Source: Macrostomum lignano
Lineage: Eukaryota
NCBI GenBank assembly: GCA_002269645.1
Contig: NIVC01002151.1
Span: 62,001 to 126,000 of the forward strand
Length of the DNA stretch: 64,000 nt
Direction of reading: 5' to 3'
Under the pieces are notes generated by a model. That model ran no database searches and was not told where the DNA came from. It saw only the letters and a list, made by a program, of their open reading frames with translations. Every line of letters starts with the position of its first letter. Within the stretch, counting starts at the first letter, position 1. The position numbers and the translations under genes are program-made. Positions 1 through 25,083 of the stretch are shown piece after piece.

Positions 1-608
1 TCTATCTATCTATCTATCTTTATGAATTGAATTTGTTAACAGCTGACTAGACAGATTACTTTTTTATGGCATTAAATTGAAATTTCGGAATGTGCCGCTC
101 GGGCGCAGGCAGATGTGAAAAAGCTCTCAAAACCCATCTGAATGCAGTAAATTTTGCAATCCAAAAAAGAATTCTTTCATAAATTAATAAAAAATTTTAA
201 TTTTGTCATTGCTTTCCAATGTTTTAGCTCCTTTTCCGGGTCCGCACCAACCCGGTTATTGCTTCCAACAAAGACAATACCAACTTTTGAAGCTTTGTTG
301 CATCAATAAAAAGCAAAAAGATTAAAAAAGTTCCTCACGAAAAACTTTGAAACGAAACTCCGATGGGAGCAAAAAAAGTGAAAGTCCAACCAATGAGGCA
401 GATTCAAACAGATTTTGCCCAGACTGAATGCGACATTGAACTCCGGGGAGGCACCAGGGCGCCCTGAGCTGTCATTGGCTGAAGATTGCGGTCATAAAAG
501 CTGAAATCAATCAGTTTGTTTCTTGCGCCCACAGAATCTCTGCTGCTTAAAGAGAGCCTTCGTTGGACTGATTCGTAAGTTGCAATTTGATTACAAAATG
601 GTTTTGAT

Positions 609-1758
<1,150 letters not shown>

Positions 1759-2484: not shown

Positions 2485-2934
2485 TATATTATTTGTCTAA
2501 TTTTAGCTATCAATTACTCGATTAAGGCCTATAGATTCATTGAAACCTAACGAATAATTGTGGGTGACTTGGACAACTGAAGTAGATCAAGGACGTTGCG
2601 CTCCAGTTTCTTAGGTGTTGACTGCATTTGTCCCATTCTATTGTTCATTTTTTAATCTCTTTGAGGTCTTCTTAGGTAATAATTCCCCCTCAGGTGGTGC
2701 TAATAATTGCCTTTGAGGTGATGCTCAGGTGCTAATGATTCCCTAATATACGGCTCGTATTTGATGCCATTTCATCCACACAATAGATATTTATAACACT
2801 TCATTCAGTGAGTTGAAACTATATATGAGAAAACATTTCGTTATAGAAGACTTCTAACAATAATTAGTTAAAGCTCGCAACTTTCTTTCACAGGTAAGCA
2901 AATCAAGAAAACAAAAAGCGACTGAAAACAACAA

Positions 2935-5900
2935 ATGATTCGACAGCTGATTTTGATCCTGGCTGCAGTATTCCTGGCCAGCGCGGTTGCTGCTGCGAAC
3001 GGGCGGGGTGAGTCATCAATAAACCATAATTCTTGATTGATTGATGCGCACCAAATAGCACTAATTCTGTTTAATCTTTTATTGCAAAAGTACCTGATCT
3101 GGTTTCAAAATTCTATAGAGTTTGATTTCTGAAATGCTTCTGCAGCTGACTCCCCCTTATCTAGCTGACTACCCCCTCTGTAGCTGACTCCCCCCTCTGT
3201 AGCTGACTCCCCCCTCTGTAGCTGACTCCCCCCTCTGCAGCTGACTCCCCCTTATCTAGCTGACTCCCCCTCTGCAGCTGACTCCCCCCCCTCTGCAGCT
3301 GACTCCCCCTCTGCAGCTGACTCTCCCCCTGCAGCTGACTCCCCCCTCTGTAGCTGACTCCCCCCTCTGCAGCTGACTCCCCCCATCTGCAGCTGACTCC
3401 CCCCCTCTGCAGCTGACTCCCCCCTCTGTAGCTGACTCCCCCCTCTGCAGCTGACTCCCCCCTCTGCAGCTGACTCCCCCCCTCTGCAGCTGACTCCCCC
3501 CTCTGTAGCTGACTCCCCCCTCTGTAGCTGACTCCCCCCTCTGTAGCTGACTCCCCCCTCTGCAGCTGACTCCCCCCTCTGCAGCTGACTCCCCCCTCTG
3601 CAGCTGACTCCCCCCTGCAGCTGACTCCCCCCCTCTGCAGCTGACTCCCCCCCCTCTGCAGGTGACTCCCCCCTCTGCAGGTGACTCCCCCCTCTGCAGC
3701 TGACTCCCCCCTCTGCAGCTGCAGCTGACTCCCCCCTCTGTAGCTGACTCCCCCCTCTGCAGCTGACTCCCCCCCTGCAGCTGGCGCCCCTCTGCAGCTG
3801 ACTCCCCCCTCTGCAGGTGACTCCCCCCTCTGTAGCTGACTCCCCCTCTGTAGCTGACTCCCCCCTCTGCAGGTGACTCCCCCTCTGCAGCTGACTCCCC
3901 CCTCTGCAGGTGACTCCCCCCTCTGCAGGTGACTCCCCCCTCTGCAGCTGACTCCCCCTCTGCAGCTGACTATCCCCTCTGCAGGTGACTCCCCCCTCTG
4001 TAGCTGGCGCCCCTCTGCAGCTGACTCCCCCCTCTGCAGGTGACTCCCCCCCCTCTGCAGCTGACTCCCCCTCTGCAGCTGACTCCCCCTCTGCAGCTGA
4101 CTCCCCCTCTGCAGCTGACTCCCCCCTCTGCAGGTGACTCCCCCCCCTCTGCAGCTGACTCCCCCCTCTGCAGCTGACTCCCCCTCTGCAGCTGACTCCC
4201 CCTCTGCAGCTGACTCCCCCCTCTGCAGCTGACTCCCCCCTGCAGCTGACTCCCCCCCTCTGCAGCTGACTCCCCCCCCTCTGCAGGTGACTCCCCCCTC
4301 TGCAGGTGACTCCCCCTCTGCAGCTGACTCCCCCTCTGCAGCTGACTCCCCCCCCTCTGCAGCTGACTCCCCCCCCTCTGCAGGTGACTCCCCCCTCTGC
4401 AGGTGACTCCCCCCTCTGCAGCTGACTCCCCCCTCTGCAGCTGACTCCCCCCTCTGCAGCTGACTCCCCCCTCTGTAGCTGACTCCCCCCTCTGCAGCTG
4501 ACTCCCCCTCTGCAGCTGACTCCCCCCCTGCAGCTGGCGCCCCTCTGCAGCTGACTCCCCCCTCTGCAGGTGACTCCCCCCTCTGCAGCTGACTCCCCCT
4601 CTGCAGCTGACTATCCCCTCTGCAGGTGACTCCCCCCTCTGTAGCTGGCGCCCCTCTGCAGCTGACTCCCCCCTCTGCAGGTGACTCCCCCCCTCTGCAG
4701 CTGACTCCCCCTCTGCAGCTGACTCCCCCTCTGCAGCTGACTCCCCCCTCTGCAGGTGACTCCCCCCTCTGCAGCTGACTCCCCCCCTCTGCAGCTGACT
4801 CCCCCCTCTGTAGCTGACTCCCCCTCTGTAGCTGACTCCCCCCTCTGTAGCTGACTCCCCCCTCTGCAGCTGACTCCCCCTCTGCAGCTGACTCCCCCCC
4901 TGCAGCTGACTCCCCCCCCTCTGCAGCTGACTCCCCCTCTGCAGGTGACTCCCCCCTCTGCAGGTGACTCCCCCCTCTGCAGCTGACTCCCCCCTCTGCA
5001 GCTGACTCCCCCCTCTGCAGCTGACTCCCCCCTGCAGCTGGCGCCCCTCTGCAGCTGACTCCCCCCTCTGCAGGTGACTCCCCCCTCTGTAGCTGACTCC
5101 CCCCTCTGTAGCTGACTCCTCCCTCTGCAGGTGACTCCCCCCTCTGCAGGTGACTCCCCCTCTGCAGCTGACTCCCCCTCTGCAGCTGACTATCCCCTCT
5201 GCAGGTGACTCCCCCCTCTGTAGCTGGCGCCCCTCTGCAGCTGACTCCCCCCTCTGCAGGTGACTCCCCCTCTGCAGCTGACTCCCCCTCTGCAGCTGAC
5301 TCCCCCCTCTGCAGGTGACTCCCCCCCTCTGCAGCTGACTCCCCCCTCTGCAGCTGACTCCCCCCTCTGTAGCTGACTCCCCCCTCTGTAGCTGACTCCC
5401 CCCTCTGTAGCTGACTCCCCCTCTGCAGCTGACTCCCCCTCTGCAGCTGACTCCCCCTCTGCAGCTGACTCCCCCCTCTGCAGGTGACTCCCCCCTCTGC
5501 AGCTGACTCCCCCCTCTGCAGCTGACTCCCCCCTCTGTAGCTGACTCCCCCCTCTGTAGCTGACTCCCCCCTCTGTAGCTGACTCCCCCCTCTGCAGCTG
5601 ACTCCCCCCTCTGCAGCTGACTCCCCCCCTGCAGCTGACTCCCCCCCTCTGCAGCTGACTCCCCCCCCCCTCTGCAGGTGACTCCCCCTCTGCAGGTGAC
5701 TCCCCCTCTGCAGCTGACTCCCCCTCTGCAGCTGACTCCCCCCCCTGCAGCTGACTCCCCCCTCTGTAGCTGACTCCCCCCTCTGCAGCTGACTCCCCCC
5801 TGCAGCTGGCGCCCCTCTGCAGCTGACTCCCCCCTCTGCAGGTGACTCCCCCCTCTGCAGGTGACTCCCCCCCCTCTGTAGCTGACTCCCCCCTCTGCAG

Positions 5901-6607
5901 GTGACTCCCCCCTCTGCAGGTGACTCCCCCCTCTGCAGCTGACTCCCCCTCTGCAGCTGACTATCCCCTCTGCAGGTGACTCCCCCCTCTGCAGCTGACT
6001 CCCCCCTCTGCAGGTGACTCCCCCCCCTCTGCAGCTGACTCCCCCCTCTGCAGCTGACTCCCCCTCTGCAGCTGACTCCCCCTCTGCAGCTGACTCCCCC
6101 CTCTGCAGGTGACTCCCCCCCTCTGCAGCTGACCCCCCCTCCCCTGCAGCTGACTCCCCCTCTGCAGCTGACTCCCCCTCTGCAGGTGACTCCCCCCCTC
6201 TGCAGCTGACTCCCCCCCCTGCAGCTGACTCCCCCCCCCTCTGCAGCTGACTCCCCCCCCTGCAGCTGACTCCCCCCCCTCTGCAGCTGACTCCCCCCCC
6301 TGCAGCTGACTCCCCTCTCTGCAGCCGACTCCCCCCCCTGCAGCTGACTCCCCTCTGCAGGTGAATTTTGTTTTCTCAGTTAGCAACAAAACTTTCAGAT
6401 CCACCAGAGCGGATGCCGCAGCCGCAGTCGTCCGGCCGTCAGCGCTGGTCTGCAATTGAGCCTCTCCCGTCCCTGAGCCTGAAGCAGCTGCTGGACCGCC
6501 AGCCTGTCGGTCTGAACATCAAACGATTCGCCGACTATAAGAAGCGCTTCGCCGATTACAAACGTTTCGCCGACTACAAACGATTTGCCGACTACAAGAA
6601 GCGCTAA
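2935..6607 (+). CDS. Neuropeptide precursor (93 aa): signal peptide plus 4 x FADY flanked by KR/KKR. Exons 2935-3007 and 6399-6607
   Basis: Exon 1 encodes MIRQLILILAAVFLASAVAAANGR (hydrophobic signal peptide) and ends at the phase-1 donor G|gtgagt. The acceptor actttcag|AT is phase-compatible. Total 282 nt. C-terminus reads ...GLNI-KR-FADY-KKR-FADY-KR-FADY-KR-FADY-KKR-stop. Confidence 0.88.
3140..6360 (+). repeat. Intronic 19-21-bp minisatellite (CTGACTCCCCCCTCTGCAG)n, roughly 160 units
   Basis: Direct reading; fills almost all of neuropeptide intron 1. Variable C-run and CAG/TAG and CTGAC/GTGAC variants. Confidence 0.97.
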
Positions 6608-6904
6608 TTGCCTTGCGAGCTGATTACTTGATAATAACCTATCGGCGGACTGATAAGCCGGCACACCTGAGGCAATGAAAAATAAAACTGAGTAAGCGAG
6701 GCCGCCACATCATAAGTTCCAATTAAACCATTGAAAAAATCTTAATCAATAAATTCGGCATAGCGCACCTTTAAGATAATTTATTGAGTGAAATAACTTC
6801 AATGCCTTGCACAGGACTTGGCGCTCATTGTGCGTTAAAAATTTCATTTAATATTTTTCCTTAGGTTTTGGACATTCCGCTCCGAATTCCAAACTCCAGT
6901 TTCT

Positions 6905-7725
6905 ATATTCCAAATCCCCGATTTCACATAGCAGATTCTTCCCAATCCCATATTCAAATCTCCGATTCCAACCCCCAGATTCCAAATCCCCGATTCCAAA
7001 TCCCAGATTCCAAATCCCAGACTTCAAATCCCAGATTCCAAATCCCAGATTTCACATAGCAGATTCCAAATCTCAGTTTCCAAATCCTAGATTCCAATCC
7101 CAGATTCCAAATCCCAGATTCCAAATCCCAGACTCCAAATCCCCGATTCCATATCCCAGATTCCAAATCCCAGACTCCAAATCCCCGATTCCATATCCCA
7201 GATTCCAAATCCCGGACTCCAAATCCCCGATTCCATATCCCAGATTCCAAATCCCAGACTCCAAATCCCCGATTCAAAATCCCAGATTCCAAATCTTAGA
7301 TTCCAAATCCCAGACTCCAAATCCCCGATCCCAAATCCCAGATTCCAAATCTTAGATTCCAAATCCCAGACTCCAAATCCCCGATTCCATATCCCAGATT
7401 CCAAATCCCAGATTCCAAATTTCAGATTCAAAATCCTAGATTCCAAATCACAGATTCCAAATCTTAGATCTTAGATTCCAAATCCCAGACTCCAAATCCT
7501 CGATTCCATATCCCAGATTTCAAATCCCAGACTCCAAATCACAGATTCCAAATCCCAGATTCCAAATTTCAGATTCAAAATCCTAGATTCCAAATCCCAG
7601 ATTCCAAATCTTAGATTCCAAATACCAGACTCCAAATCCCCGATTCCATATCCCAGATTCCAAATCCCCGATTCCATATCCCAGATTTCAACTCCCAGAT
7701 TCTAAATCCCCGACTCCAAATCCCC
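6905..7725. repeat. 14-bp minisatellite (CCAAATCCCAGATT / CCAAATCCCAGACT)n
   Basis: Direct reading; source of the ESGIWNLG-type ORFs. Confidence 0.95.
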
Positions 7726-9903: not shown

Positions 9904-12714
9904 TGCAAAACGGCCAACAATTTCTCATATACGAAATCGTTGGTGTGAAATCGCGCAACAATCTCGTATGGCGCCGAGCTATGCTAGAATATATTTATTT
10001 AGGTGGCTACTTTTGAGAGAAGCAAATTACAGCATATCGAGAATACAGCATTACATGTATGTGCTTCTAGAATGCTGCGGATGCTTGTCCAGAGGAAATT
10101 GCAAATCTATTATAGTGTTGAAATCTGACCTTGCATAATGATTATGATTTTTGCAACCAGAATACTTGCAATAGCTATAGCTAGATTATTGGGTTCTTTT
10201 CGGCCATTTTCATCTGTTATTCCATATAACAGTATACGCTCGTAAAGTAAGCCAGAAATATTGTACACGTTACATGTGATATTCTAATAAACTTCTCAAA
10301 GCTTTCGCAAGGAGCGATGTCTCCATCCAATACGAGCGTGCCTATGTGTGCCTTCCGCCAGCCAGCCGATCGGGGCACGGCCGGCTTGCATCCCTGCTGG
10401 CTTTGCCCCTGCATGTAAACGTAGCTCAGCAATTTAATTTGAACGCTACGACATATATTAGCATTATACACCATATACCGCGAGTACATGCACATGTAGG
10501 AAGAATCTTATTGCTCAGCTAATTACTGCTTTTCTAATTGTGCAGATGCATTTAAACAACCTTCAAATATATATACTTTCGAAATATAAATATAAAACAA
10601 GAAAAAACGAATATTATTTTCTAACTGTCAAGTTTTTTCATGTAGAATTTCTCGCTAGCCAAGAATATTTGCAAAGACATGAATAAAGTTTTCTTTGGCT
10701 TGCAAGACTTTTAAGATTTTATGAAGCAAAAGCGTCGTCTATGGGCCAACCTCTTGGGCCGGTTTGGGTGGAATCTTGAGAGACATAAACTGCAGGGTAC
10801 AGAACCGGGGGCTTCCTCCACTTTTGAGAAAGCTTTTGGCTGGTGTATATTTTTTGCCTTGCTATATAGCATTTTGCGATCGAAAAATTGTTTGTCTAGC
10901 AAAAGAAAAACGGCCCTGCAGATGCACAAATGGAAGGGCAAGACGCACAAGTGCAAGAAGAGGATGCAGACTGCATCATCGACGTCCTGACAAAACATGC
11001 GATTTTGTTGACTAGAGCAGCAAGGCTAAGGCCATATAATACTCACTTAAGGCTGGTATTCTTTTCTCTTCTGATCTGATGTTAGCGAACATATTTTTGT
11101 CATGCTTTTAGACAACTTAAAGCAACAAAAGATTGGGCAAAGTGAGGCGAACAAAGGAAGAATAAGCTTCGGAATGAGGTGCTCGCGAACAACTCAAGTT
11201 TTTTTCAGATTTTGCGAGAGATTCCTACTTTTATTCAAATGTCACCGAGGTCTTTTTCTTGCAAAAGTATCTTTAAGAGAAAATTTGCCTTCAAAATGTG
11301 CAAGAAAATTGCCCAGAAAATCTCGCCGGAAACTCGCAGATTTTTATTCTTCTAAATGCAAGAATTTCTAGTATTACACGAAAGAAAAGAATTAATTTCT
11401 CCTTTTTTCATTCAGCCCATTGCATGCAAAATGCAAAAATTACCTTTTTATGTACTAGCTCACATGTACATATATAGCAGTTAAAACCAAAGTTTAGATC
11501 TAATTAGGAACCTAATCTAAATAGTTTTGATGTGATAAAAAGCCAGACTTTAGCGCAAGAACTAAAAATGGTAAAACAGCTCAGTTTGACTACTTACTTT
11601 TGCAGTACTTCACGAATTTATTCTAATTTTAGCTTAGATTAGTAAAACAAAGCTTTTTGACAGCTTAAAAAAAGAGTGCCATAAAGAATAAGCCGCAACA
11701 ACAATAACAGGAAATCAAAAGCAAATCCTTTGCATTTTAAGAACTTTTTTCTTGTTTTACTAATTTTGCCTTAACAACCGTGTCCAAATTTGAAGCAGTT
11801 GCTCAACTCGATAAAATTAGGTAGATCTGTTATTATTTGTTTTCTTTCAAGCAATCCAGTAAAATACATTTATATATCATGCTAAACGAGTCAAAAAGTT
11901 CAACTGAAAAGTTCAACGTTTAAAACTTTAGTATTGGTCCTGATTTCCTTATTTGTTAAACAACCCGCACTTCGGCACTTGCATTACTGCTCTGTATTAT
12001 ATGCATATGAGCTATTGTGCAATATAATATGATTCTTTTACTCTGTAATTTCTTAAGCGATACAATTGATTTATACCCTTTATTCAGTTTAATCTAGTAG
12101 AATTTTGTAGAAAAATCTCAGGCTGTTCTTTATTTTCAGTAAAAGTAATTTATAGCCTTGAATAATCTGACCAAAAAGGTAAAAAACAAAAAAAAGAATT
12201 TGCCTATATGACTATAGGCAGCATACAATAACCAATTATGAAGTACCTAGAGCGCGACTGTAATTTTAAGCATAAATTGCATATTTCTAACTGCCAAATT
12301 TTATTTAGAATTCCTGGTAAAGTAAATAAATAAATATATTGTTTTAAATGATTAATAATCATACAGAATCCTCTTCTGTTTATTGCTGGTTAAAATCTTT
12401 ACACGAATGCTCAATAATAATTTAGAGAAAATAATTTCCCCAAATCAGTCATATTTATTCGACTTAAAACTGTTAAATTATTTTTAATTTTCAATTTAGT
12501 ACTCATAAAAATTTTGCTTTTACTATATTAGATAAATGTTTATGAGCGTAGCTCATATTTTCAAAGTACTAGGTCTAAATTCAAATTTTGACATTAGAAG
12601 CAATCACCTGTTCTGTTTAATTCTTCCCAGCTGCATCCAAATTTTGATTCCAATTCTGCCTAGACTTATATAATAGCTTTTTTCATTACCCGATTTTCAG
12701 CACTTCTAACAAAA

Positions 12715-13180
12715 ATGTCTGACGCGAAGGACTACATTACCAAGCGCGAGATTCCTCAGCTTTTTGAGGTAAAATTAGATGTTTCATTCTCGTTTCTTTC
12801 ACGTTAAATGCAGCGACACGAAAATATAACTCCCACTTCAGTGCCTGATGACGGGTCTAATGTACCACAGGCCCGGTGATCACGTGGCCTACCTGCAAGA
12901 CTGCCTGGAGAAAATCAAAGCCAAAGGCGTGTCCAGCGTGCGCTGGGACCTGTTCCTGGAGGCCAAGAGGGCCAAGACCCCGCTGCCGCCCGTGACTCCG
13001 CCGAGGGGCAGCCGTCCGACCTCCAGTCGGGGTTAGTTGCTGAGTTGCCGGCAGGCAAGCAGACAGACAGACAGACAGATACTAAGACTGACAGACAGAC
13101 ACTAAGACAGAAGGACAGACAGACAGACAGACAGACAGGCAGGCAGACAGACAGACAGGCAGACAGAAAGACACTAAGAC

Positions 13181-13225
<45 letters not shown>

Positions 13226-13248
13226 GGCAGACAGACAGACAGGCAGAA

Positions 13249-13303
<55 letters not shown>

Positions 13304-13312
13304 TACTAAGAC

Positions 13313-13349
<37 letters not shown>

Positions 13350-13356
13350 CTAAGAC

Positions 13357-13432
<76 letters not shown>

Positions 13433-13504
13433 GGAGAGACAGACAGACAGACATTAAGATAGACAGAGAGACAGACAGACAGACAGACAGGCAGACAGGC
13501 AGGC

Positions 13505-13540
<36 letters not shown>

Positions 13541-13548
13541 CGACACTA

Positions 13549-13593
<45 letters not shown>

Positions 13594-13596
13594 GGC

Positions 13597-13629
<33 letters not shown>

Positions 13630-13802
13630 GGCAGGCAGAAAGAAAGACAGACAGACAGACAGACAGACAGACAGGCAGACAGACACTAAGACAGATAGAC
13701 AGACAGGCAGACATACAGACAAGACAGACAAGACAGACAAACAGATGGACAGACAGAAAGACAGACAGACAGACAGACAGACAGACCGACCGACACTAAG
13801 AC

Positions 13803-13863
<61 letters not shown>

Positions 13864-13870
13864 GGCAGGC

Positions 13871-13903
<33 letters not shown>

Positions 13904-13910
13904 GGCAGGC

Positions 13911-13951
<41 letters not shown>

Positions 13952-16900
13952 CTCTTACGACTGTCTGTGTGTTTAGCGGGACCTGAGTTATGTTAATGCG
14001 TTACGTGGACCACGCAATTCCGGTTAAAAAATAGAGTCTGTTTTGACAACGCGAAAGGCTAGCTAGGGTTATCTTTTTGTTAACTTGACGGAATAGCCAG
14101 TTCGGGGAAACTGTGGTGGTTCACTAACTACGTTTTGGGGACCGGGTTAGGTGGACCGCAAAAAAACAGTTGGTTTAGTTAGACCTCTTTCGTTGTAGAA
14201 AATTTATTGCTTTAAACTGTTCTTTTGAACTAATTAAAACAGAAATTCTCAAAAAGAACAGATAAAAGGGTTACGACGTCATTTAATGAAAATATCCCGA
14301 GTTCAAACCAATTTATTTAGCATTATTAATCGGGTTAATCGGGTTAAACAAATGTACGATCGCATTAGTTAGTTGCGTCGCGTGAATACAAGAAGGTGAA
14401 TGAAAATAAAGCATTTTGAAAATAAATACAGAATCATATCAAATGACTGTAAAGTCATTAAAACTAATTTAGGTCAAAATGTATGCTTCAAATACATGTT
14501 AACAAACGTAAGATTCCATTAGTTAAAAAAGGTCATCCGAGTACGAGCCTACAAGAAGTTGAAGGGCATTTTTAATAACGACAAAAGTTACTAAAACTGA
14601 AATTAAATTGATTTGACTACATCAGTCCTATTATACTGAATGAGTTGGTGAGCAATCATATGATAAGCCAATCATTTTACCGACTTTCATCTTTTCGTTC
14701 ACGCAGATGATGGCTTAATCTTCTTATTTTTCTACGAAATATTCTCCTGGACCTTCCCTGCCTCCGTGGTCCCGGACCGCTTCTGTTATTGATCTGTCAT
14801 TGCCTCTCTCACGAATTTCAGCTTACTTAGCCATCGAATCCGCTTTCGTCAGCTCAGCTCTATGATGAACCTTTCTATATTTCTCGTCAATTAGTGGTTT
14901 GAATCTTCTTTTACAGTTCGTTTTAACCTTCATCTCGGTGAAACGCAGTCAGTCTCGTCGAGCTCAGGCGAACAAAATCAACCACAGGCTCCTACAAAGG
15001 TAGAAAATAAAATTAACTGACAATCAAACAGACACAGAAATCTGTTCCAGTTGTGTCTGTAGGTTATGTGGACCACCTGAGAGCCAGAGCCTCAAACAGA
15101 CAGAGAAATCTGTTCGAGTTGTGTCTGTAGGTTAGGTGGACCACCTTCTGAGAGCCAAAGCCTCAAACAGACTGAGAGAGCTGCTTCAGTTGTGTCTGTA
15201 GGTTATGTGGACCACCTAAGAGCAAGAGCCTCAAACAGACAGAGAAATCTGTTCGAGTTGTGTCTGTAGGTTAGGTGGACCAGCTACTCCAAAGCACTTC
15301 TAGGCGATAATCTGAGCCAGGAATCTCCGAGAGCCTCTCGTTACACATCCAGATGTTCTGCCTTGATGCTGGACTAGCTCACTTTCTAGGAATATGTTCT
15401 GATTGCATTCTAACAAACTGAAGCATTCTCGGCACTAAACTTTCTCGGCGGCTCTGAGAGCCAGAGCCTCAAACAGACAGAGAAATCTGTTCGAGTTGTG
15501 TCTGTAGGTTAGGTGGACCAGCTACTCCAAAGCACTTCTAGGCGATAATCTAAGCCATGAATCTCCGAGAGCCTCTCGTTACACATCCAGATGTTCTGCC
15601 TTGATGCTGGACTAGCTCACTTTCTAGGAATCTGTTCTGATTGCATTCTAACAAACTGAAGCATTCTCGGCACTAAACTTTCTCGGCGGCTCTGAGAGCC
15701 AGAGCCTCAAACAGACAGAGAAATCTGTTCGAGTTGTGTCTGTAGGTTAGGTGGACCAGCTACTCCAAAGCACTTCTAGGCGATAATCTGAGCCAGGAAT
15801 CTCCGAGAGCCTCTCGTTACACATCCATGTTCTACCTTGATGCTGGACTAGCTCACTTTCTAGGAATCTGTTCTGATTGCATTCTAACAAACTGAAGCAT
15901 TCTCGGCACTAAACTTTCTCGGCGGCTCTGAGAGCCAGAGCCTCAAACAGACAGAGAAATCTGTTCGAGTTGTGTCTGTAGGTTAGGTGGACCAGCTACT
16001 CCAAAGCACTTCTAGGCGATAATCTGAGCCAGGAATCTCCGAGAGCCTCTCGTTACACATCCAGATGTTCTGCCTTGATGCTGGACTAGCTCACTTTCTA
16101 GGAATCTGTTCTGATTGCATTCTAACAAACTGAAGCATTCTCGGCACTAAACTTTCTCGGCGGCTCTGAGAGCCAGAGCCTCAAACAGACAGAGAAATCT
16201 GTTCGAGTTGTGTCTGTAGGTTAGGTGGACCAGCTACTCCAAAGCACTTCTAGGCGATAATCTGAGCCAGGAATCTCCGAGAGCCTCTCGTTACACATCC
16301 AGATGTTCTGCCTTGATGCTGGACTAGCTCACTTTCTAGGAATCTGTTCTGATTGCATTCTAACAAACTGAAGCATTCTCGGCACTAAACTTTCTCGGCG
16401 GCTCTGAGAGCCAGAGCCTCAAACAGACAGAGAAATCTGTTCGAGTTGTGTCTGTAGGTTAGGTGGACCAGCTACTCCAAAGCACTTCTAGGCGATAATC
16501 TGAGCCAGGAATCTCCGAGAGCCTCTCGTTACACATACAGATGTTCTGCCTTGATGCTGGACTAGCTCACTTTCTAGGAAAATGTTCTGATTGCATTCTA
16601 ACAAACTGAAGCATTCTCGGCACTAAACTTTCTCGGCGGCTCTGAGAGCCAGAGCCTCAAACAGACAGAGAAATCTGTTCGAGTTGTGTCTGTAGGTTAG
16701 GTGGACCAGCTACTCCAAAGCACTTCTAGGCGATAATCTGAGCCAGGAATCTCCGAGAGCCTCTCGTTACACATCCAGATGTTCTGCCTTGATGCTGGAC
16801 TAGCTCACTTTCTAGGAATCTGTTCTGATTGCATTCTAACAAACTGAAGCATTCTCGGCACTAAACTTTCTCGGCGGCTCTGAGAGCTAGAGCCTCAAAC

Positions 16901-19900
16901 AGACAGAGAAATCTGTTCGAGTTGTGTCTGTAGGTTAGGTGGACCAGCTACTCCAAAGCACTTCTAGGCGATAATCTGAGCCAGGAATCTCCGAGAGCCT
17001 CTCGTTACACATCCAGATGTTCTGCCTTGATGCTGGACTAGCTCACTTTCTAGGAATCTGTTCTGATTGCATTCTAACAAACTGAAGCATTCTCGGCACT
17101 AAACTTTCTCGGCGGCTCTGAGAGCCAGAGCCTCAAACAGACAGAGAAATCTGTTCGAGTTGTGTCTGTAGGTTAGGTGGACCAGCTACTCCAAAGCACT
17201 TCTAGGCGATAATCTGAGCCAGGAATCTCCGAGAGCCTCTCGTTACACATCCATGTTCTACCTTGATGCTGGACTAGCTCACTTTCTAGGAATCTGTTCT
17301 GATTGCATTCTAACAAACTGAAGCATTCTCGGCACTAAACTTTCTCGGCGGCTCTGAGAGCCAGAGCCTCAAACAGACAGAGAAATCTGTTCGAGTTGTG
17401 TCTGTAGGTTAGGTGGACCAGCTACTCCAAAGCACTTCTAGGCGATAATCTGAGCCAGGAATCTCCGAGAGCCTCTCGTTACACATCCAGATGTTCTGCC
17501 TTGATGCTGGACTAGCTCACTTTCTAGGAATCTGTTCTGATTGCATTCTAACAAACCGAAGCATTCTCGGCACTAAACTTTCTCGGCGGCTCTGAGATCC
17601 AGAGCCTCAGACAGAAATCTGTTCGAGTTGTGTCTGTAGGTTAGGTGGACCAGCTACTCCAAAGCACTTCTAGGCGATAATCTGAGCCAGGAATCTCCGA
17701 GAGCCTCTCGTTACACATCCATGTTCTACCTTGATGCTGGACTAGCTCACTTTCTAGGAATCTGTTCTGATTGCATTCTAACAAACTGAAGCATTCTCGG
17801 CACTAAACTTTCTCGGCGGCTCTGAGAGCCAGAGCCTCAAACAGACAGAGAAATCTGTTCGAGTTGTGTCTGTAGGTTAGGTGGACCAGCTACTCCAAAG
17901 CACTTCTAGGCGATAATCTGAGCCAGGAATCTCCGAGAGCCTCTCGTTACACATACAGATGTTCTGCCTTGATGCTGGACTAGCTCACTTTCTAGGAATC
18001 TGTTCTGATTGCATTCTAACAAACTGAAGCATTCTCGGCACTAAACTTTCTCGGCGGCTCTGAGATCCAGAGCCTCAAACAGACAGAAATCTGTTCGAGT
18101 TGTGTCTGTAGGTTAGGTGGACCAGCTACTCCAAAGCACTTCTAGGCGATAATCTGAGCCAGGAATCTCCGAGAGCCTCTCGTTACACATCCAGATGTTC
18201 TGCCTTGATGCTGGACTAGCTCACTTTCTAGGAATCTGTTCTGATTGCATTCTAACAAACTGAAGCATTCTCGGCACTAAACTTTCTCGGCGGCTCTGAG
18301 AGCTAGAGCCTCAAACAGACAGAGAAATCTGTTCGAGTTGTGTCTGTAGGTTAGGTGGACCAGCTACTCCAAAGCACTTCTAGGCGATAATCTGAGCCAG
18401 GAATCTCCGAGAGCCTCTCGTTACACATACAGATGTTCTGCCTTGATGCTGGACTAGCTCACTTTCTAGGAATCTGTTCTGATTGCATTCTAACAAACTG
18501 AAGCATTCTCGGCACTAAACTTTTTCGGCGGCTCTGAGAGCCAGAGCCTCAAACAGACAGAGAAATCTGTTCGAGTTGTGTCTGTAGGTTAGGTGGACCA
18601 CCTTCTGAGAGCTAAAGCCTCAAACAGACTGAGAGAGCTGCTTCAGTTGTGTCTGTAGGTTATGTGGACCACCTAAGAGCCAGAGCCTCAAACAGACAGA
18701 GAAATCTGTTCGAGTTGTGTCTGTAGGTTAGGTGGACCAGCTACTCCAAAGCACTTCTAGGCGATAATCTGAGCCAGGAATCTCCAAGAGCCTCTCGTTA
18801 CACATCCAGATGTTCTGCCTTGATGCTGGACTAGCTCACTTTCTAGGAATCTGTTCTGATTGCATTCTAACAAACTGAAGCATTCTCGGCACTAAACTTT
18901 CTCGGCGGCTCTGAGAGCCAGAGCCTCAAACAGACAGAGAAATCTGTTCGAGTTGTGTCTGTAGGTTAGGTGGACCAGCTACTCCAAAGCACTTCTAGGC
19001 GATAATCTGAGCCAGGAATCTCCGAGAGCCTCTCGTTACACATCCATGTTCTACCTTGATGCTGGACTAGCTCACTTTCTAGGAATCTGTTCTGATTGCA
19101 TTCTAACAAACTGAAGCATTCTCGGCACTAAACTTTCTCGGCGGCTCTGAGAGCCAGAGCCTCAAACAGACAGAGAAATCTGTTCGAGTTGTGTCTGTAG
19201 GTTAGGTGGACCAGCTACTCCAAAGCACTTCTAGGCGATAATCTGAGCCAGGAATCTCCGAGAGCCTCTCGTTACACATACAGATGTTCTGCCTTGATGC
19301 TGGACTAGCTCACTTTCTAGGAATCTGTTCTGATTGCATTCTAACAAACTGAAGCATTCTCGGCACTAAACTTTCTCGGCGGCTCTGAGATCCAGAGCCT
19401 CAAACAGACAGAAATCTGTTCGAGTTGTGTCTGTAGGTTAGGTGGACCAGCTACTCCAAAGCACTTCTAGGCGATAATCTGAGCCAGGAATCTCCGAGAG
19501 CCTCTCGTTACACATCCAGATGTTCTGCCTTGATGCTGGACTAGCTCACTTTCTAGGAATCTGTTCTGATTGCATTCTAACAAACTGAAGCATTCTCGGC
19601 ACTAAACTTTCTCGGCGGCTCTGAGATCCAGAGCCTCAAACAGACAGAAATCTGTTCGAGTTGTGTCTGTAGGTTAGGTGGACCAGCTACTCCAAAGCAC
19701 TTCTAGGCGATAATCTAAGCCATGAATCTCCGAGAGCCTCTCGTTACACATCCAGATGTTCTGCCTTGATGCTGGACTAGCTCACTTTCTAGGAATCTGT
19801 TCTGATTGCATTCTAACAAACTGAAGCATTCTCGGCACTAAACTTTCTCGGCGGCTCTGAGAGCCAGAGCCTCAAACAGACAGAGAAATCTGTTCGAGTT

Positions 19901-22130
19901 GTGTCTGTAGGTTAGGTGGACCACCTTCTGAGAGCCAAAGCCTCAAACAGACTGAGAGAGCTGCTTCAGTTGTGTCTGTAGGTTATGTGGACCACCTAAG
20001 AGCCAGAGCCTCAAACAGACAGAGAAATCTGTTCGAGTTGTGTCTGTAGGTTAGGTGGACCAGCTACTCCAAAGCACTTCTAGGCGATAATCTGAGCCAG
20101 GAATCTCCGAGAGCCTCTCGTTACACATCCAGATGTTCTACCTTGATGCTGGACTAGCTCACTTTCTAGGAATATGTTCTGATTGCATTCTAACAAACTG
20201 AAGCATTCTCGGCACTAAACTTTCTCGGCGGCTCTGAGAGCCAGAGCCTTAAACAGACAGAGAAATCTGTTCGAGTTGTGTCTGTAGGTTAGGTGGACCA
20301 CCTTCTGAGAGCCAAAGCCTCAAACAGACTGAGAGAGCTGATTCAGTTGTGTCTGTAGGTTAGGTGGACCAGCTTCTCTACAGCAATTGAGTTGCAGGCC
20401 TTGCAGCTAGCTACTTTGAGATCATCAAACGAAACTCACTTTTCTGGACTCGGTGTCGACGGATTTGCGAGCAGACTGATGATTTTCACCAGGCGATGCG
20501 GCTTCTTCGATTTCGCAGTGGCTTTTTGCGACGGTGTTTTTTTAGTTTTTATTTTAGGCTTGGCGTCCTTTTTTGCGGGTCATCATATTTTGGTTGTAGA
20601 TTACAGTTTTTGGCACAATAAATTTATATATGGATGAAACTTGGAGTAAGGATTAACATTAGACCTATTAAGTATAAAAAACCGTTCTAATCTATACAAT
20701 TGCAATCCTTTAGAGTTGTATAGTATGGATTATAAGTACTTTCTTTTAAACTGTCTGTGTCTGGTCTCACTACGCCATGGTTTACGTGGACCACCCGCTT
20801 AGACATTATATATCCCTCTCTCCACTGTCTTACCTTCAGAACGCTTGCGGGTTTCCTATTGGCTGCGGTCGGTCCCATTGTTGGGGTGGATCTATCCTCC
20901 TAAGTGTTAACCAGCCAATTATAGAAAGGGAGGTCTGTCTGTCTGTCTGTTCCAACCCTATACTCCTGCACATGTGTTTACGTGGACCAAACAGACAGTG
21001 AGTGTTAGGCTGACTGTTAATGCGTTCTTAGTTTTACTGGGACCGCAATCAAGTCGACCTTTTGCTAGAGAGTCAGGGACCCGATCGCTAGTTAAAAGGC
21101 CCTTCTTAATTGCGTCCTCTCGATCAAATCTTTTGCATGTACATGGATGAATTGTCCTTTTCAATTAGGTAAATTGCATCTTCAACTTTGCACTTGAAAG
21201 GCTGCAGCTTAGGATCTTCTTCTTCCAAAATTGGAGGAGGATAGAACAGGATATCCCATAGTGTTTACGATAGAATTGGCAAGCACTTAATTCATGAAGT
21301 TGCTATTTTCTTCTTGTCTAATGGTAGAGCCTCAGAAATTCGCATTTACACAGTGTGGCTATCAAGGACCACTGGGAGTTCTTGAGAAGTCATTGAAGAA
21401 TACTATTTAAGCTTCACTTAAATATCTTTCTTGTCTCGGAGTCTTTATCGTTTGATCTGGTTCGCGAATTGGATTTCTTTACGTTGGTGTCTTACTCTGT
21501 GAGTCTGTGCTCAGAGTACGATACCGGAATTGCTGGAACTGAGCTAATTAAATGGAGTTTAAAGTTTACTGTATCAAATTCATTTCGCATACGAGGTTTC
21601 AGAATTTTTAATTAACCTGCGTACCTACTTGAATGTCAAAGAACTGAACGCATATTGTTTTAAAGCCAGTAGCGGTCATAATATGATGCCAACATAGCCC
21701 TTTGTTCGTAAGGTAATGATCTGTAAAAAATTCAGTTTTGCATCGAATCTATGCTTAATAACTGCTATACACAAACAGACACAAACAGACACAAACAGAC
21801 ACAAACAGACACAAACAGACGATTTTCGAAAAATTTTCTAAAATTTTTCGGTTTACGTGGACCAGACTCGCTCGGTTTAGGTAGACCAGGCTGGAGGTCC
21901 AGCTAAACTGAAATGCGAATAACTTTGGAAAAAACCATGCTAGACATCCCAAAATTGCTTAAGCCTTTCTTGACCCGCCTGACATTAATGTGAGATCCTC
22001 ATCAACGTCTTAACCCCACCAGAGACAAAATTATTTGGTGGTCCACCTAAGTGGTCTACCTACACCGGTTGGTCCAGCTAACGAGGCTACTGAACTTCCA
22101 AAAAGTCCACGTAAACACACAGACAGTAGA

Positions 22131-22172
<42 letters not shown>

Positions 22173-22180
22173 CGACACTA

Positions 22181-22213
<33 letters not shown>

Positions 22214-25083
22214 GGCAGAAAGACAGACAGACAGACAGACAGACAGACAGGCAGACAGACAGACAGGCAGAAATACAGACAGAGATCAGCCTATTGAGCC
22301 CCTTTCCTCTCCCATCTCGCGCCCGCAGCTTCGTCCCGCGCCGACTCCCTATTCGACAAGAAGCCGGTGCTGCCACCGATCGGCGCCGCCTCCGGAGCCC
22401 GCGTGCCCGAGCTGGCGCGGCCGTTGAACTGCCCGGTGCTGCTGGTCATCGCAGGCCCCGGTAGCGGCAAGGCTCGCGTCGCCCGTCTGGTCGCTGATCG
22501 CTACGACTGCCAACTGATCAGCGCTGGCGCCCTTCTGCGCGCGGGAAACGATGAAAGGGCGCGTGAAATGGCGCCAGACTTGGAGGTGCTCGCCGCGGTG
22601 ATTGGCGCTATTAATGAGGCCACAGCCGATGCCAGCTGCCGCGGCCTGGTGATCGAGGGATATCCGAGAAGCCTGGCGCAGCTTGAGGACTACATGGAGC
22701 ATGTGAGGGCCTTGATGACGTCATCTTCGGGATTGATTTTGATGACGCTATTTTAGAGTTCAGGGTTGTACCTAAACTAGGCTGACCTGACCTAAACTAG
22801 GCTGACATGACCTAAACTAGACTGACCCTGACCTGAACTAGACTGACCTGACCTAAACTAGACTGACCTGACCTAAACTAGGCTGACATGACCTAAACTA
22901 GACTGACCTGACCTAAACTAGACTGACCTGACCTAAACTAGACTGACCCTGACCTGAACTAGACTGACCTGACCTAAACTAGACTGACCTGACCTAAACT
23001 AGGCTGACATGACCTAAACTAGACTGACCTGACCTAAACTAGACTGACCCTGACCTGAACTAGACTGACCTGACCTAAACTAGACTGACCCTGACCTGAA
23101 CTAGACTGACCTGACCTAAACTAGACTGACCTGACCTAAACTAGACTGACCCTGACCTAAACTAGACTGACCTGACCGAAAATAGACTGACCTGACCTAA
23201 ACTAGACTGACCTGACCTAAACTAGACTGACCTGACCTAAAATAGACTGACCTGACCTAAACTAGGCTGACCCTGACCTAAACTACACTGACCTGACCTA
23301 AAATAGACTGAACTGACCTAAACTAGACTGACCTGACCTAAACTAGACTGACCTGACCTTGATGCACAGCATACTGACCCTGCAAACCGGCTTTCAGATC
23401 CAACGAGTCGATCACGCCCTACTCCTCGACTTCGAAGAGTCCAGCCTGCAGCAGCGACTCCTGTCCGAGAACAAACACCAGCCCGGCGACATCGCCCGGC
23501 GAATCTCCGAGTTTAAGACGGCCTGCCTGCCCGCCTGTCGGGTGCTGGACGAAGACGGCAAACTGCTGGTGCTGCCGGTCGATCCCGACGCCAGCGACGA
23601 GGCTGTCAACCAGGAGGCCGTCCGGGTGCTCGACGCCCTGCTGGCGTCCGAGTCCACCCGAGCGGAGCCGACAGAAACGTCGTCGGCAAAAACCGGCGGT
23701 CCTGCCGCTGCCGCCGGCCAGGTGACCAGCATTCGTCGTCTGGTCAATCTCGGACAACCAGCTGACCGAGTGGCCGACGGACAGTCTAGCAAGCCGCCTC
23801 CGATGGTGCTGCTGTTGGGCGGCCCGGGCAGCGGCCGGAGGACCTGCCTGGAACGTCTGGGACGATTGAACGATAATAAACTGACTATTGTGGACTTGGC
23901 CTCGGACTTGGAACCCGATGAGGCCGTGGATCGATTAGAGGCGGCCGCTGGGGACGGAATACCTATGATTGTGAAGGTAAGGGAGTACTCGAGCTTTTAT
24001 TGATGATGGAATCGTTTTGTACCAAAATATAATGTACATGTACAACAGTACAGAAATTTACGTGTATGTGGCGCCAAATGGGAAGCATGTAGCGTCTAAA
24101 TATACATAAAATAAGAGGCGCCACAATGATAGGTGCATGTAAATATGTAACACATTCATGTACATGTACGCGCACTGCAGGGCTTCCCAGAAACGGAAGA
24201 AGGCCTCAGAGCCATGTATGCCCGGGTTGGCGCGCCAGATCTCGCGCTGCTCATCGACTGTCACGAGGCCGACATGATGGAGCGCCTGGCTGAGGCTGGG
24301 TCGCAGTCGGCGGACACAGCCGCTGAAAGAATGCGCCGATTCAAGGAGGAGACTCTGCCGGTGGTTCAGCACTTTGACGAGGCTGGCTTGCTCTGTGTGG
24401 TGAGCAGTTGTTGCTAAAAATAGCCCTGACTCACTCCTGAACCTGCACCCACCTCACTCCTGCTCCCACCACCTCACTCCTGCACCCACCTCACTCCTGC
24501 ACCCACCACCTCACTCCTGCACCCACCACCTCACTCCTGGACCCATCACCTCACTCCTGCTCCCACCACCTCACTCCTGCACCCACCTCACTCCTGCACC
24601 CATCACCTCACTCCTGCTCCCACCACCTCACTCCTGCACCCACCTCACTCTTGCACCCACCACCTCACTCCTGCACCCACCTCACTCTTGCACCCACCAC
24701 CTCACTCCTGCACCCACCTCACTCTTGCACCCACCACCTCACTCCTGCACCCACCACCTCACTCCCGTTTTGCGCTACAACATCAAAAACGACCTTGAAT
24801 ATACATCCAATATCAACAACTCTAGGTGCTTGGGGACAAAGAGCCGGACGACGTACTCAAGGAGGTGAAGTCACTCGTCGATTTCGTGCTTTTCAATCGG
24901 ACGGACGTCAGTCTCGCCCAGCAGCACCAAGCGGTGGCCGAGGCCGCGGTGGATCGTCTGCGAGCCCGACCTGCAGACGACGAATCCGAGGAGGCAGCCG
25001 CGGCGGCAAAAATCCAAGCTGGTTTTCGAGGCTACCAGGTGCGAAAACAACAGGTGGTAGCGTCGGCTGCTAAGCGGCAGTAA
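12715..25083 (+). CDS. AK5: Adenylate kinase 5-like protein (557 aa): N-terminal dimerization/docking domain, two degenerate AK domains, C-terminal IQ motif. Exons 12715-12768, 12842-13031, 22329-22702, 23398-23976, 24181-24399, 24826-25083
   Basis: The N-terminus [40 protein letters not shown] matches my recollection of the AK5 N-terminus ([15 protein letters not shown]). P-loops GPGSGK and GPGSGR; EGYPR and KGFPE motifs; [15 protein letters not shown] motif. All six exons have GT-AG junctions with compatible phases; 1674 nt total. Confidence 0.87.
13055..13950. repeat. (GACA)n microsatellite in AK5-like intron 2
   Basis: Direct reading; resumes at about 22128-22270. Confidence 0.97.
13960..22127. 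mobile_element. Putative non-autonomous TIR element (about 8.2 kb) carrying an internal satellite
   Basis: Left end actgtctgtgtgtttagcgggac (13960-13982) versus the reverse complement of the right end actgtctgtgtgtttacgtggac (22105-22127). (G)TGGACC motifs point forward on the left and in the interior and reverse near the right end. Lies between two (GACA)n tracts. No transposase ORF and no clear TSD seen. Confidence 0.5.
15022..20375. repeat. 238-bp tandem satellite, about 22 highly similar units, with occasional extra subunits of about 60 bp
   Basis: Period measured at gcattctcgg: 15423, 15661, 15897, 16135 (238, 236, 238). Short gtggaccacc/aaacagac subunits at about 15020-15240, 18600, 19920 and 20300. 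Confidence 0.97.
22128..22270. repeat. (GACA)n microsatellite, right remnant
   Basis: Direct reading. Confidence 0.93.
22771..23358. repeat. 20-bp intronic minisatellite (CTGACCTGACCTAAACTAGA)n in AK5-like intron 3
   Basis: Direct reading. Confidence 0.95.
24430..24765. repeat. 17/20-bp intronic minisatellite (CACCCACC[ACC]TCACTCCTG)n in AK5-like intron 5
   Basis: Direct reading. Confidence 0.93.

What the first reader, a model, noticed from the sequence alone, without database searches (positions are those of the whole stretch)
2935..6607. Hidden neuropeptide precursor releasing four non-amidated FADY tetrapeptides; possible achatin-related or D-amino-acid peptide
Seen: the signal-peptide exon is too short for the ORF track and lies 3.4 kb from exon 2 across a repeat. 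It splices in phase to give a 93-aa prohormone ending KR-FADY-KKR-FADY-KR-FADY-KR-FADY-KKR. The four copies use different synonymous codons, which suggests protein-level selection rather than a DNA repeat. No Gly donor is present, so the peptides would be free acids. Known: achatin-family precursors release non-amidated tetrapeptides (GFAD in Achatina, GFGD in Platynereis, GFFD/GYFD in Aplysia) with a D-residue at position 2; dermorphin-type peptides carry D-Ala at position 2. Inference: FADY shares the F-A-D core, shifted by one residue. It may be a divergent flatworm achatin or a new family, possibly with a D-Ala2. I do not recognise FADY as a described peptide.
Basis: partly seen in the sequence, partly recalled or inferred. 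Interest (0 to 1): 0.8.

Follow-up and report, generated by a model that had tools for sequence, protein, structure and literature searches.

The report
Flatworm FADY multi-copy peptide precursor gene
This is a real, already annotated but uncharacterised two-exon gene of the flatworm Macrostomum lignano whose 93-residue secreted product looks like a neuropeptide-type precursor releasing four copies of the tetrapeptide FADY; it appears to be a lineage-specific family, and no evidence links it to achatin.

Summary
Exon 1 (2935-3007) joins exon 2 (6399-6607) through a phase-1 GT-AG intron. The product is a 93-aa protein with a signal-peptide-like N-terminus that ends KR-FADY-KKR-FADY-KR-FADY-KR-FADY-KKR*.

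The gene is not hidden. The window is Macrostomum lignano contig NIVC01002151.1 (window + 62000). That GenBank record already carries a gene with a 93-residue product at exactly 2935-6607. The annotation was built only from RNA-seq and transcript assemblies, so the splice junction is RNA-supported.

Two homeologous contigs carry the same gene. One has four FADY copies. The other has five copies, one of them FADF, gained through a 21-nt in-frame insertion, and its intron is only 971 nt. Between copies dN/dS is about 0.13, and all differences among the FADY units are synonymous.

The best reading is a lineage-restricted multi-copy peptide prohormone giving non-amidated FADY or FADF. No homologue turned up in protein libraries, Pfam, PDB, metagenomes or the flatworm prohormone catalogues I could read.

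The achatin link fails the motif test (G-aromatic-[G/A/F]-[D/N]). The D-Ala idea cannot be tested here. Neuronal expression and peptide processing are inferred, not shown.

This is a new member of a known kind, of moderate-to-low interest.

The parts
2820..2826 (+). TATA-like element (TATATAT) about 110 nt upstream of the start codon; candidate core promoter
   Evidence: Pattern scan. Identical in the homeolog L004. Function is inferred only.
2935..3007 (+). Exon 1 coding part: Met1-Arg24 plus the first base of codon 25. It encodes the signal-peptide-like segment MIRQLILILAAVFLASAVAAANGR. The donor is G|GTGAGT.
   Evidence: 11-residue Kyte-Doolittle mean up to 3.3 over residues 4-15; small residues A-V-A-A-A at the likely cleavage region. 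The start of the annotated CDS in the public record falls at this base.
3008..6398 (+). Phase-1 intron of 3391 nt, GT...AG, nearly filled by a 19-bp minisatellite (3139-6364, unit TCTGCAGCTGACTCCCCCC, about 170 copies)
   Evidence: The homeologs have the same splice sites but different repeat lengths: 971 nt in L004 and more than 3.4 kb in L005.
6399..6607 (+). Exon 2 coding part: the last two bases of Asp25 through Arg93, plus the TAA stop. It holds the propeptide spacer and the peptide repeats.
6401..6520 (+). Spacer propeptide PPERMPQPQSSGRQRWSAIEPLPSLSLKQLLDRQPVGLNI. It contains an RQR site and no Cys.
   Evidence: Translation. There is one P48R difference between homeologs.
6521..6604 (+). 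Peptide array: KR 6521-6526; FADY 6527-6538; KKR 6539-6547; FADY 6548-6559; KR 6560-6565; FADY 6566-6577; KR 6578-6583; FADY 6584-6595; KKR 6596-6604
   Evidence: TRF also sees it as an 18-nt period with 4.2 copies. The homeolog L004 has an extra in-frame 21-nt unit (FADF-RKR).
6681..6686 (+). First AATAAA after the stop codon (others at 6722 ATTAAA and 6748 AATAAA); candidate poly(A) signal
   Evidence: Pattern scan. Usage was not determined.

Best explanation
This is a genuine, transcribed two-exon gene of Macrostomum lignano. It is already in GenBank but has no match to any named family. It encodes a 93-aa secretory preproprotein built like a multi-copy neuropeptide or peptide-hormone precursor.

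Shown:
- The exon structure and the in-phase splice.
- A transcript-derived annotation at the same coordinates.
- A hydrophobic N-terminal leader.
- Four identical FADY units, each bracketed by KR or KKR.
- Conservation of this design in three genomic copies, with mostly synonymous change and gain or loss of whole units.

Inferred:
- The leader is removed by signal peptidase around Ala19-Ala21.
- Prohormone convertases cut after the KR/KKR sites, and a carboxypeptidase E/D-type enzyme trims the basic residues. This would release 4 x FADY as free-acid tetrapeptides (no Gly, so no amidation) plus a spacer peptide of about 40 residues.
- One homeolog would give 4 x FADY plus 1 x FADF.
- The peptides most likely act as secreted signalling molecules, probably from neurons or secretory cells, on an unknown receptor.

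The family looks lineage-restricted and is not an achatin.
For: - Sequence and splice.
- The window is NIVC01002151.1, offset +62000. The record lists a gene at window 2935-6607 with a 93-residue product, and a unique single-intron solution reproduces it.
- The GenBank annotation of this assembly derives only from RNA-seq and transcript assemblies, with TransDecoder CDS calls (PMC5730564).
- Homeologs are annotated with 93 and 100 residues and the same splice sites.
- Window versus L004: 5 synonymous and 2 non-synonymous differences, dN/dS 0.13, binomial P = 0.013. The 21-nt indel adds exactly one unit, FADF-RKR.
- The three differences among the four FADY units are all synonymous. The neutral expectation is about 1/6 per change, so about 0.005 for three; this is my own arithmetic.
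- Leader hydropathy.
- It is the only multi-copy-peptide-like pattern in the window.
- Short non-amidated peptides released at KR/KKR sites are established in flatworms and acoels, for example GYHFFRL and GMAWDF, both confirmed by mass spectrometry.
Against: - There are no expression-site data, no peptidomics and no receptor.
- No orthologue outside M. lignano was found, so deep conservation is unproven.
- The three copies are at least 95% identical even in non-coding flanks, so the selection signal rests on seven substitutions.
- The signal peptide was judged by rule of thumb, not by SignalP.
- I saw transcript support only through the annotation and the paper describing how it was made, not as reads.
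- The genome is saturated with tandem repeats, so a young repeat-born ORF is conceivable.
Confidence: 0.72

Rival explanations
1. The gene and its processing are as described, but the peptides are exocrine rather than neuronal. They would be released from gland cells (prostate/seminal fluid, adhesive, pharyngeal or epidermal glands) as a pheromone, a mating-related peptide or another external signal.
For: The sequence shows secretion and dibasic processing but not the cell type. Planarian prohormone genes are also expressed in glands, gut, pharynx, testes and copulatory organs (PMC2953531). M. lignano has many small secreted reproduction-related proteins (PMC5977470 is listed).
Against: A short precursor with tightly packed identical tetrapeptides is the classic neuropeptide design. 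FADY was not found in the supplementary files held for the seminal-fluid screen. That is a weak test, because those files may not contain sequences.
Confidence: 0.18
2. One reading: FADY is a divergent flatworm achatin, or a dermorphin-like peptide with D-Ala2, acting through an achatin-type receptor.
For: It is a tetrapeptide, non-amidated, multi-copy and dibasic-flanked, with an F-A-D string as in Achatina GFAD. L-to-D isomerisation typically hits residue 2.
Against: The achatin motif is G-[F/Y]-[G/A/F]-[D/N], and GFGN/GFGD is conserved from xenacoelomorphs to deuterostomes. The precursors are Gly-rich, and the isomerised residue is the aromatic at position 2. FADY has no Gly, has Ala at position 2, ends in Tyr or Phe, and aligns only after a one-residue shift. 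No precursor similarity to anything was detected.
Confidence: 0.04
3. This is a non-functional or very young ORF. An 18-21-nt tandem repeat in a transcribed, repeat-rich region happens to read KR-FADY, and TransDecoder called it. No bioactive peptide is made.
For: The window holds dozens of minisatellites. TRF detects the peptide array as an 18-nt repeat. No homologue exists in any library searched. Copy number differs between homeologs.
Against: - There is a proper hydrophobic leader on a separate exon with a phase-1 intron.
- Every unit is bracketed by dibasic sites.
- Differences among units are synonymous only, dN/dS is 0.13, and the indel is one whole unit in frame.
- All three copies retain intact ORFs and splice sites.
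- No other repeat in the window gives such a pattern.
Confidence: 0.06

Closest known systems
Generic invertebrate multi-copy neuropeptide precursors, including the flatworm npp/spp prohormones of Schmidtea and Schistosoma (Collins et al. 2010, PMC2953531)
   Same: Small preproprotein; N-terminal signal peptide; several copies of one short peptide separated by KR/KKR. Non-amidated products also occur there (GYHFFRL, YLTGGIRY, and the schistosome xFDPIxF/Y peptides).
   Different: None of the 51 planarian prohormones or the listed schistosome prohormones contains FADY, FADF or any D-[YF]-dibasic unit (with a positive control). The peptide is only four residues, and the units are packed with no spacer residues at all.
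Acoelomorph AWDF and LWDY multi-copy peptides (Thiel et al. 2018, PMC6188537)
   Same: Non-amidated, evenly spaced multi-copy peptides ending in Asp-aromatic (W-D-F / W-D-Y) and released at KR/KKR sites, for example KR-GMAWDF-KKR. Processing was confirmed by LC-MS/MS.
   Different: They come from a different phylum. They are defined by a Trp-Asp pair that FADY lacks (it has Ala-Asp), the peptides are longer, and spacers separate the copies. There is no detectable precursor similarity. The resemblance is one of form and may be convergent.
Achatin family (GFAD, GFFD, GFGD, GFGN; D-Phe2)
   Same: Non-amidated tetrapeptides in multiple copies between dibasic sites, with an acidic residue in the peptide.
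   Different: The consensus G-[F/Y]-[G/A/F]-[D/N] is not met. The precursor is not Gly-rich. The residue that would be isomerised is Ala, not an aromatic. Nothing is known about a receptor.

Membership tests
Multi-copy neuropeptide / peptide-hormone precursor (functional class) | N-terminal signal peptide | tested here: met
   Heuristic only. The n-region is M-I-R, a 14-residue hydrophobic core has a Kyte-Doolittle mean up to 3.3, and small residues A-V-A-A-A sit at the -3/-1 positions. SignalP was not available.
Multi-copy neuropeptide / peptide-hormone precursor (functional class) | Repeated near-identical short peptides, each flanked by mono- or dibasic convertase sites | tested here: met
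   KR-FADY-KKR-FADY-KR-FADY-KR-FADY-KKR. A five-copy variant with FADF-RKR occurs in a homeolog.
Multi-copy neuropeptide / peptide-hormone precursor (functional class) | Spliced mRNA exists | tested here: met
   This is indirect. The GenBank gene at window 2935-6607 has a 93-residue product, and that annotation is built solely from RNA-seq and transcript assemblies. I did not see the reads themselves.
Multi-copy neuropeptide / peptide-hormone precursor (functional class) | Expression in neurons or endocrine cells, and detection of the processed peptide | not testable with these tools
   No expression atlas or peptidomic data for this gene could be reached.
Achatin | Peptide motif G-[F/Y/aromatic]-[G/A/F]-[D/N] (GFAD, GFFD, GFGD, GFGN) | tested here: not met
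   FADY and FADF have no Gly, have Ala at position 2 and end in an aromatic residue.
Achatin | Glycine-rich multi-copy precursor with dibasic sites, non-amidated | tested here: inconclusive
   Multi-copy, dibasic-flanked and non-amidated: yes. Glycine-rich: no, with only 3 Gly in 93 residues and none in the repeat region ('glycine-rich achatin pNPs').
Achatin | D-amino acid at position 2, and activation of the achatin receptor only by the D-form | not testable with these tools
   This needs chiral peptidomics and receptor assays (background).
Acoelomorph AWDF / LWDY peptides | C-terminal Trp-Asp-aromatic motif in evenly spaced paracopies | tested here: not met
   FADY has Ala-Asp-aromatic with no Trp. 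Evenly spaced non-amidated copies are shared.
Catalogued flatworm prohormones (Smed npp/spp/npy etc., schistosome npp, Taenia crassiceps npp) | Presence of the same or a similar peptide in a catalogued precursor | tested here: not met
   No FADY, FADF, ADYKR, D[YF]KR or D[YF]KK in the held supplements, and the control strings were found. McVeigh 2009 and Koziol 2016 were not readable.

The most novel reading that the evidence does not exclude
FADY/FADF founds a previously unrecognised macrostomid, or wider flatworm, signalling-peptide family. Its activity would depend on a mass-silent or labile modification: L-to-D isomerisation at residue 1 or 2, or sulfation of the Asp-Tyr tyrosine. It might act on an orphan or achatin-clade GPCR. 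That would make it the first D-amino-acid or sulfotyrosine tetrapeptide transmitter in Platyhelminthes, in a transgenic model organism.
Probability: 0.07. Interest if true: 0.65.

Novelty: new member of a known kind. Interest (0 to 1): 0.3.

Why it matters
Macrostomum lignano is a transgenic flatworm model for regeneration, stem-cell and mating biology, and I found no published neuropeptide catalogue for it. A compact precursor for an unusually small, acidic, non-amidated tetrapeptide gives a concrete candidate ligand for GPCR deorphanisation. Peptidomics can test it (FADY [M+H]+ 515.21), and RNAi or transgenic reporters can probe its function. It also shows a multi-copy peptide gene caught gaining or losing units between homeologs of a recent genome duplication.

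Lineage-specific multi-copy peptide precursors turn up routinely in every newly surveyed invertebrate, so the gene's existence would not surprise a specialist. Only a demonstrated unusual modification or receptor would.

Tried and rejected
1. The search for homologous proteins with the 93-aa product found nothing at E<=10. The same tool also missed an annotated neighbour protein, so this negative is weak.
2. Exact look-ups of the 93-aa and 100-aa products show they are not in the 15-billion protein collection, although the gene-position index has the genes.
3. phmmer against 1.84 billion representatives gave only P0129, a 955-aa repeat protein, and P0130, with 'NIKYFVDYQP' repeats. Both are repeat-inflated, and neither has a signal peptide or dibasic architecture, so I rejected them.
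4. Pfam and PDB sequence searches gave nothing.
5. Degenerate DNA patterns for FADYKRFADYK and DYKRFADY in JGI metagenomes gave 0 and 11 hits. All 11 are chance matches in unrelated ORFs, or an 18-nt duplication in non-coding DNA in L016.
6. Full-text searches for FADY and RFADY returned only author names, an antibody loop and a glycoprotein-hormone fragment.
7. I looked for a Macrostomum neuropeptidome or cell atlas and found none in the library.
8. I considered a link to the schistosome/planarian FDPIxF/Y peptides (spp-15/npp-26) and rejected it. Only Phe and Asp are shared and the spacing differs.
9. Pfam scans of other large ORFs in the window gave nothing.
Full report
**Observation.**
- An ATG at 2935, with A at -3 and an in-frame stop 12 nt upstream, opens a 73-nt coding exon. 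It ends at a consensus donor, G|GTGAGT, at 3007/3008.
- After 3391 nt, the acceptor AAAACTTTCAG|AT at 6398/6399 restores the frame (G+AT = Asp25). The ORF then runs to TAA at 6605-6607.
- The product is 93 aa: MIRQLILILAAVFLASAVAAANGR-D-PPERMPQPQSSGRQRWSAIEPLPSLSLKQLLDRQPVGLNI-KR-FADY-KKR-FADY-KR-FADY-KR-FADY-KKR.
- The four FADY units differ at three nucleotides, all at synonymous third positions. No Gly precedes any basic site.
- The intron is almost entirely a 19-bp minisatellite of about 170 copies (3139-6364).
- The window is saturated with tandem repeats. Even so, FADY is the only dibasic-bracketed identical 3-8-mer repeated three or more times in any of the six frames.

**Where the window comes from, and whether the gene is hidden.**
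- A septin exon in the window is 98% identical to a Macrostomum lignano protein.
- Fetching the neighbourhood of adjacent genes showed that locus L003 is 100% identical to window 37113-16241. The window is therefore NIVC01002151.1 of assembly GCA_002269645.1 (Mlig_3_7), with record coordinate = window + 62000.
- To reach the finding's own coordinates I reconstructed the neighbouring adenylate-kinase-like protein exon by exon. I confirmed it by exact look-up and fetched 10 kb past it.
- The record lists a called gene at L006 233-3905, which is window 2935-6607, with a product of 93 residues.
- The assembly paper states that the GenBank annotation comes only from a genome-guided transcriptome. 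That transcriptome used StringTie/TACO on RNA-seq plus the de novo assembly MLRNA150904, with CDS calls by TransDecoder (PMC5730564).
- So the gene is not hidden, and the 3007/6399 junction has RNA support. I saw that support through the annotation, not as reads.

**Homeologs.** M. lignano carries recent large-scale duplications. Two further contigs hold collinear copies of the region, septin - Pin1 - ADK-like - FADY.
- L004 (NIVC01001981.1) has the gene with the same donor and acceptor but an intron of only 971 nt. Its product is 100 aa. A 21-nt in-frame insertion adds exactly one unit, giving KR-FADY-KKR-FADY-KR-FADF-RKR-FADY-KR-FADY-KKR.
- L005 (NIVC01000834.1) has a four-copy exon 2, a 93-residue annotated product, and an intron longer than 3.4 kb.
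- Window versus L004 shows 5 synonymous and 2 non-synonymous substitutions (F13L in the leader, P48R in the spacer). That gives dN/dS of about 0.13 and a binomial P of 0.013 against neutrality.
- The peptide units carry only synonymous changes, apart from the conservative Y-to-F in the extra unit.
- The copies are at least 95% identical even in the flanks, so this signal is real but rests on few events.

**Mechanism.** Shown: the architecture. Inferred from established secretory-pathway biochemistry (signal peptidase, PC1/3 or PC2 cleavage after KR/KKR, carboxypeptidase E trimming, and Gly as the obligatory amide donor):
- The leader is cleaved near Ala19-Ala21.
- Four free-acid FADY tetrapeptides are released, plus one FADF from the five-copy homeolog, along with a spacer peptide of about 40 residues.
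- A phase-1 intron directly after the leader is typical of secreted-peptide genes.
- Asp-Tyr could in principle be a sulfation site, but the neighbouring basic residues argue against it. I hold this loosely.

Cell type, processing and receptor are unknown. Neuronal expression is the most likely case by analogy with flatworm and acoel precursors of the same design. An exocrine role is a live rival.

**Search for relatives.** Nothing credible was found.
- The word-indexed protein search was empty. It also missed an annotated neighbour.
- The FADY products are absent from the protein collections. Small flatworm proteins are evidently under-sampled there.
- An exhaustive phmmer search of 1.84 billion representatives gave two repeat-inflated, architecturally unrelated hits.
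- Pfam and PDB gave nothing.
- Degenerate DNA patterns in JGI metagenomes gave only chance matches.
- Full-text literature searches found no FADY or RFADY peptide.
- The strings are absent from the complete prohormone tables of Schmidtea mediterranea and the schistosomes (positive control), from Taenia crassiceps npp sequences, and from the xenacoelomorph precursor supplement.
- Two relevant papers could not be read: McVeigh 2009, which used M. lignano ESTs, and Koziol 2016. Prior description there is not excluded.

**Comparison with known families.**
- Achatins are tetrapeptides G-[F/Y]-[G/A/F]-[D/N]. GFGN/GFGD is conserved across Bilateria, the precursors are Gly-rich, and the D-residue sits on the aromatic at position 2 and is required at the receptor. 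FADY shares only the class-level traits (tetrapeptide, non-amidated, multi-copy) and a shifted F-A-D string. It fails the defining motif, so I do not file it as an achatin.
- In form, the nearest described peptides are the acoelomorph AWDF and LWDY families. These are non-amidated, evenly spaced, end in Asp-aromatic, are released at KR/KKR, and are MS-confirmed. They are defined by Trp-Asp and belong to another phylum, so this is analogy and not membership.
- The gene works like any multi-copy prohormone, and that is the class I assign it to.

**Verdict.**
- The gene model and the prohormone reading are supported.
- 'Hidden' is wrong.
- 'Achatin-related' is not supported.
- D-Ala cannot be tested here.

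This is a new, apparently lineage-restricted member of a very familiar kind of gene. It is a useful candidate for M. lignano neurobiology but not surprising in itself.

Noticed in passing
window 1-64000 (= NIVC01002151.1:62001-126000); L001/L004, L002/L005: The window is from the M. lignano Mlig_3_7 assembly. The whole block septin-7 / Pin1 / ADK-like / FADY exists in at least three collinear copies on different contigs, at 88-99% identity. This fits the recent genome duplication reported for the DV1 line.
   Followed up: yes
window 3139-6364; L004 1744-2714; L005 1-3412: The intronic 19-bp minisatellite varies greatly in length between homeologs (intron 971 nt, 3391 nt and more than 3.4 kb). 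Each unit (CTGAC-C6-TCTGCAG) looks like a branch point plus pyrimidine tract plus CAG acceptor. 36 units read CTGCAG|GTGAC, a juxtaposed acceptor and donor like recursive-splice sites. The annotated mRNA nevertheless skips about 170 decoy acceptors.
   Followed up: partly
window 12703-25083 (+), especially 13060-13951 and 15024-20377: An intron of the ADK-like gene (561 aa, two adenylate-kinase-type P-loop domains) holds about 0.9 kb of (CAGA)n and about 5 kb of a 238-bp satellite in this copy. The homeolog on NIVC01001981.1 lacks the satellite, and its gene spans 3.3 kb instead of 12.4 kb.
   Followed up: partly
window 606-1758: A (GATA)n microsatellite of about 288 copies lies about 1.2 kb upstream of the FADY start codon.
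   Followed up: no
window 46722-46796: An interstitial run of about 12.7 TTAGGG telomere-type repeats.
   Followed up: no
L004 2837-2941: The homeolog carries a fifth peptide unit, FADF followed by RKR. The family is therefore F-A-D-[Y/F], and copy number is currently polymorphic between genome copies.
   Followed up: yes
tools (versus 33-35): The large protein collections lack the three annotated FADY products, and the word-indexed search failed to return an annotated 553-561-aa neighbour. The gene-position index does list them all. Negative protein searches for small M. lignano proteins are unreliable.
   Followed up: partly
window 6907-7724 and many others: About 40 distinct mini- and microsatellite arrays lie in 64 kb. 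Several give long spurious ORFs (LSIY, GIWN, PLVLA and similar), which shows how misleading ORF lists are in this genome.
   Followed up: no
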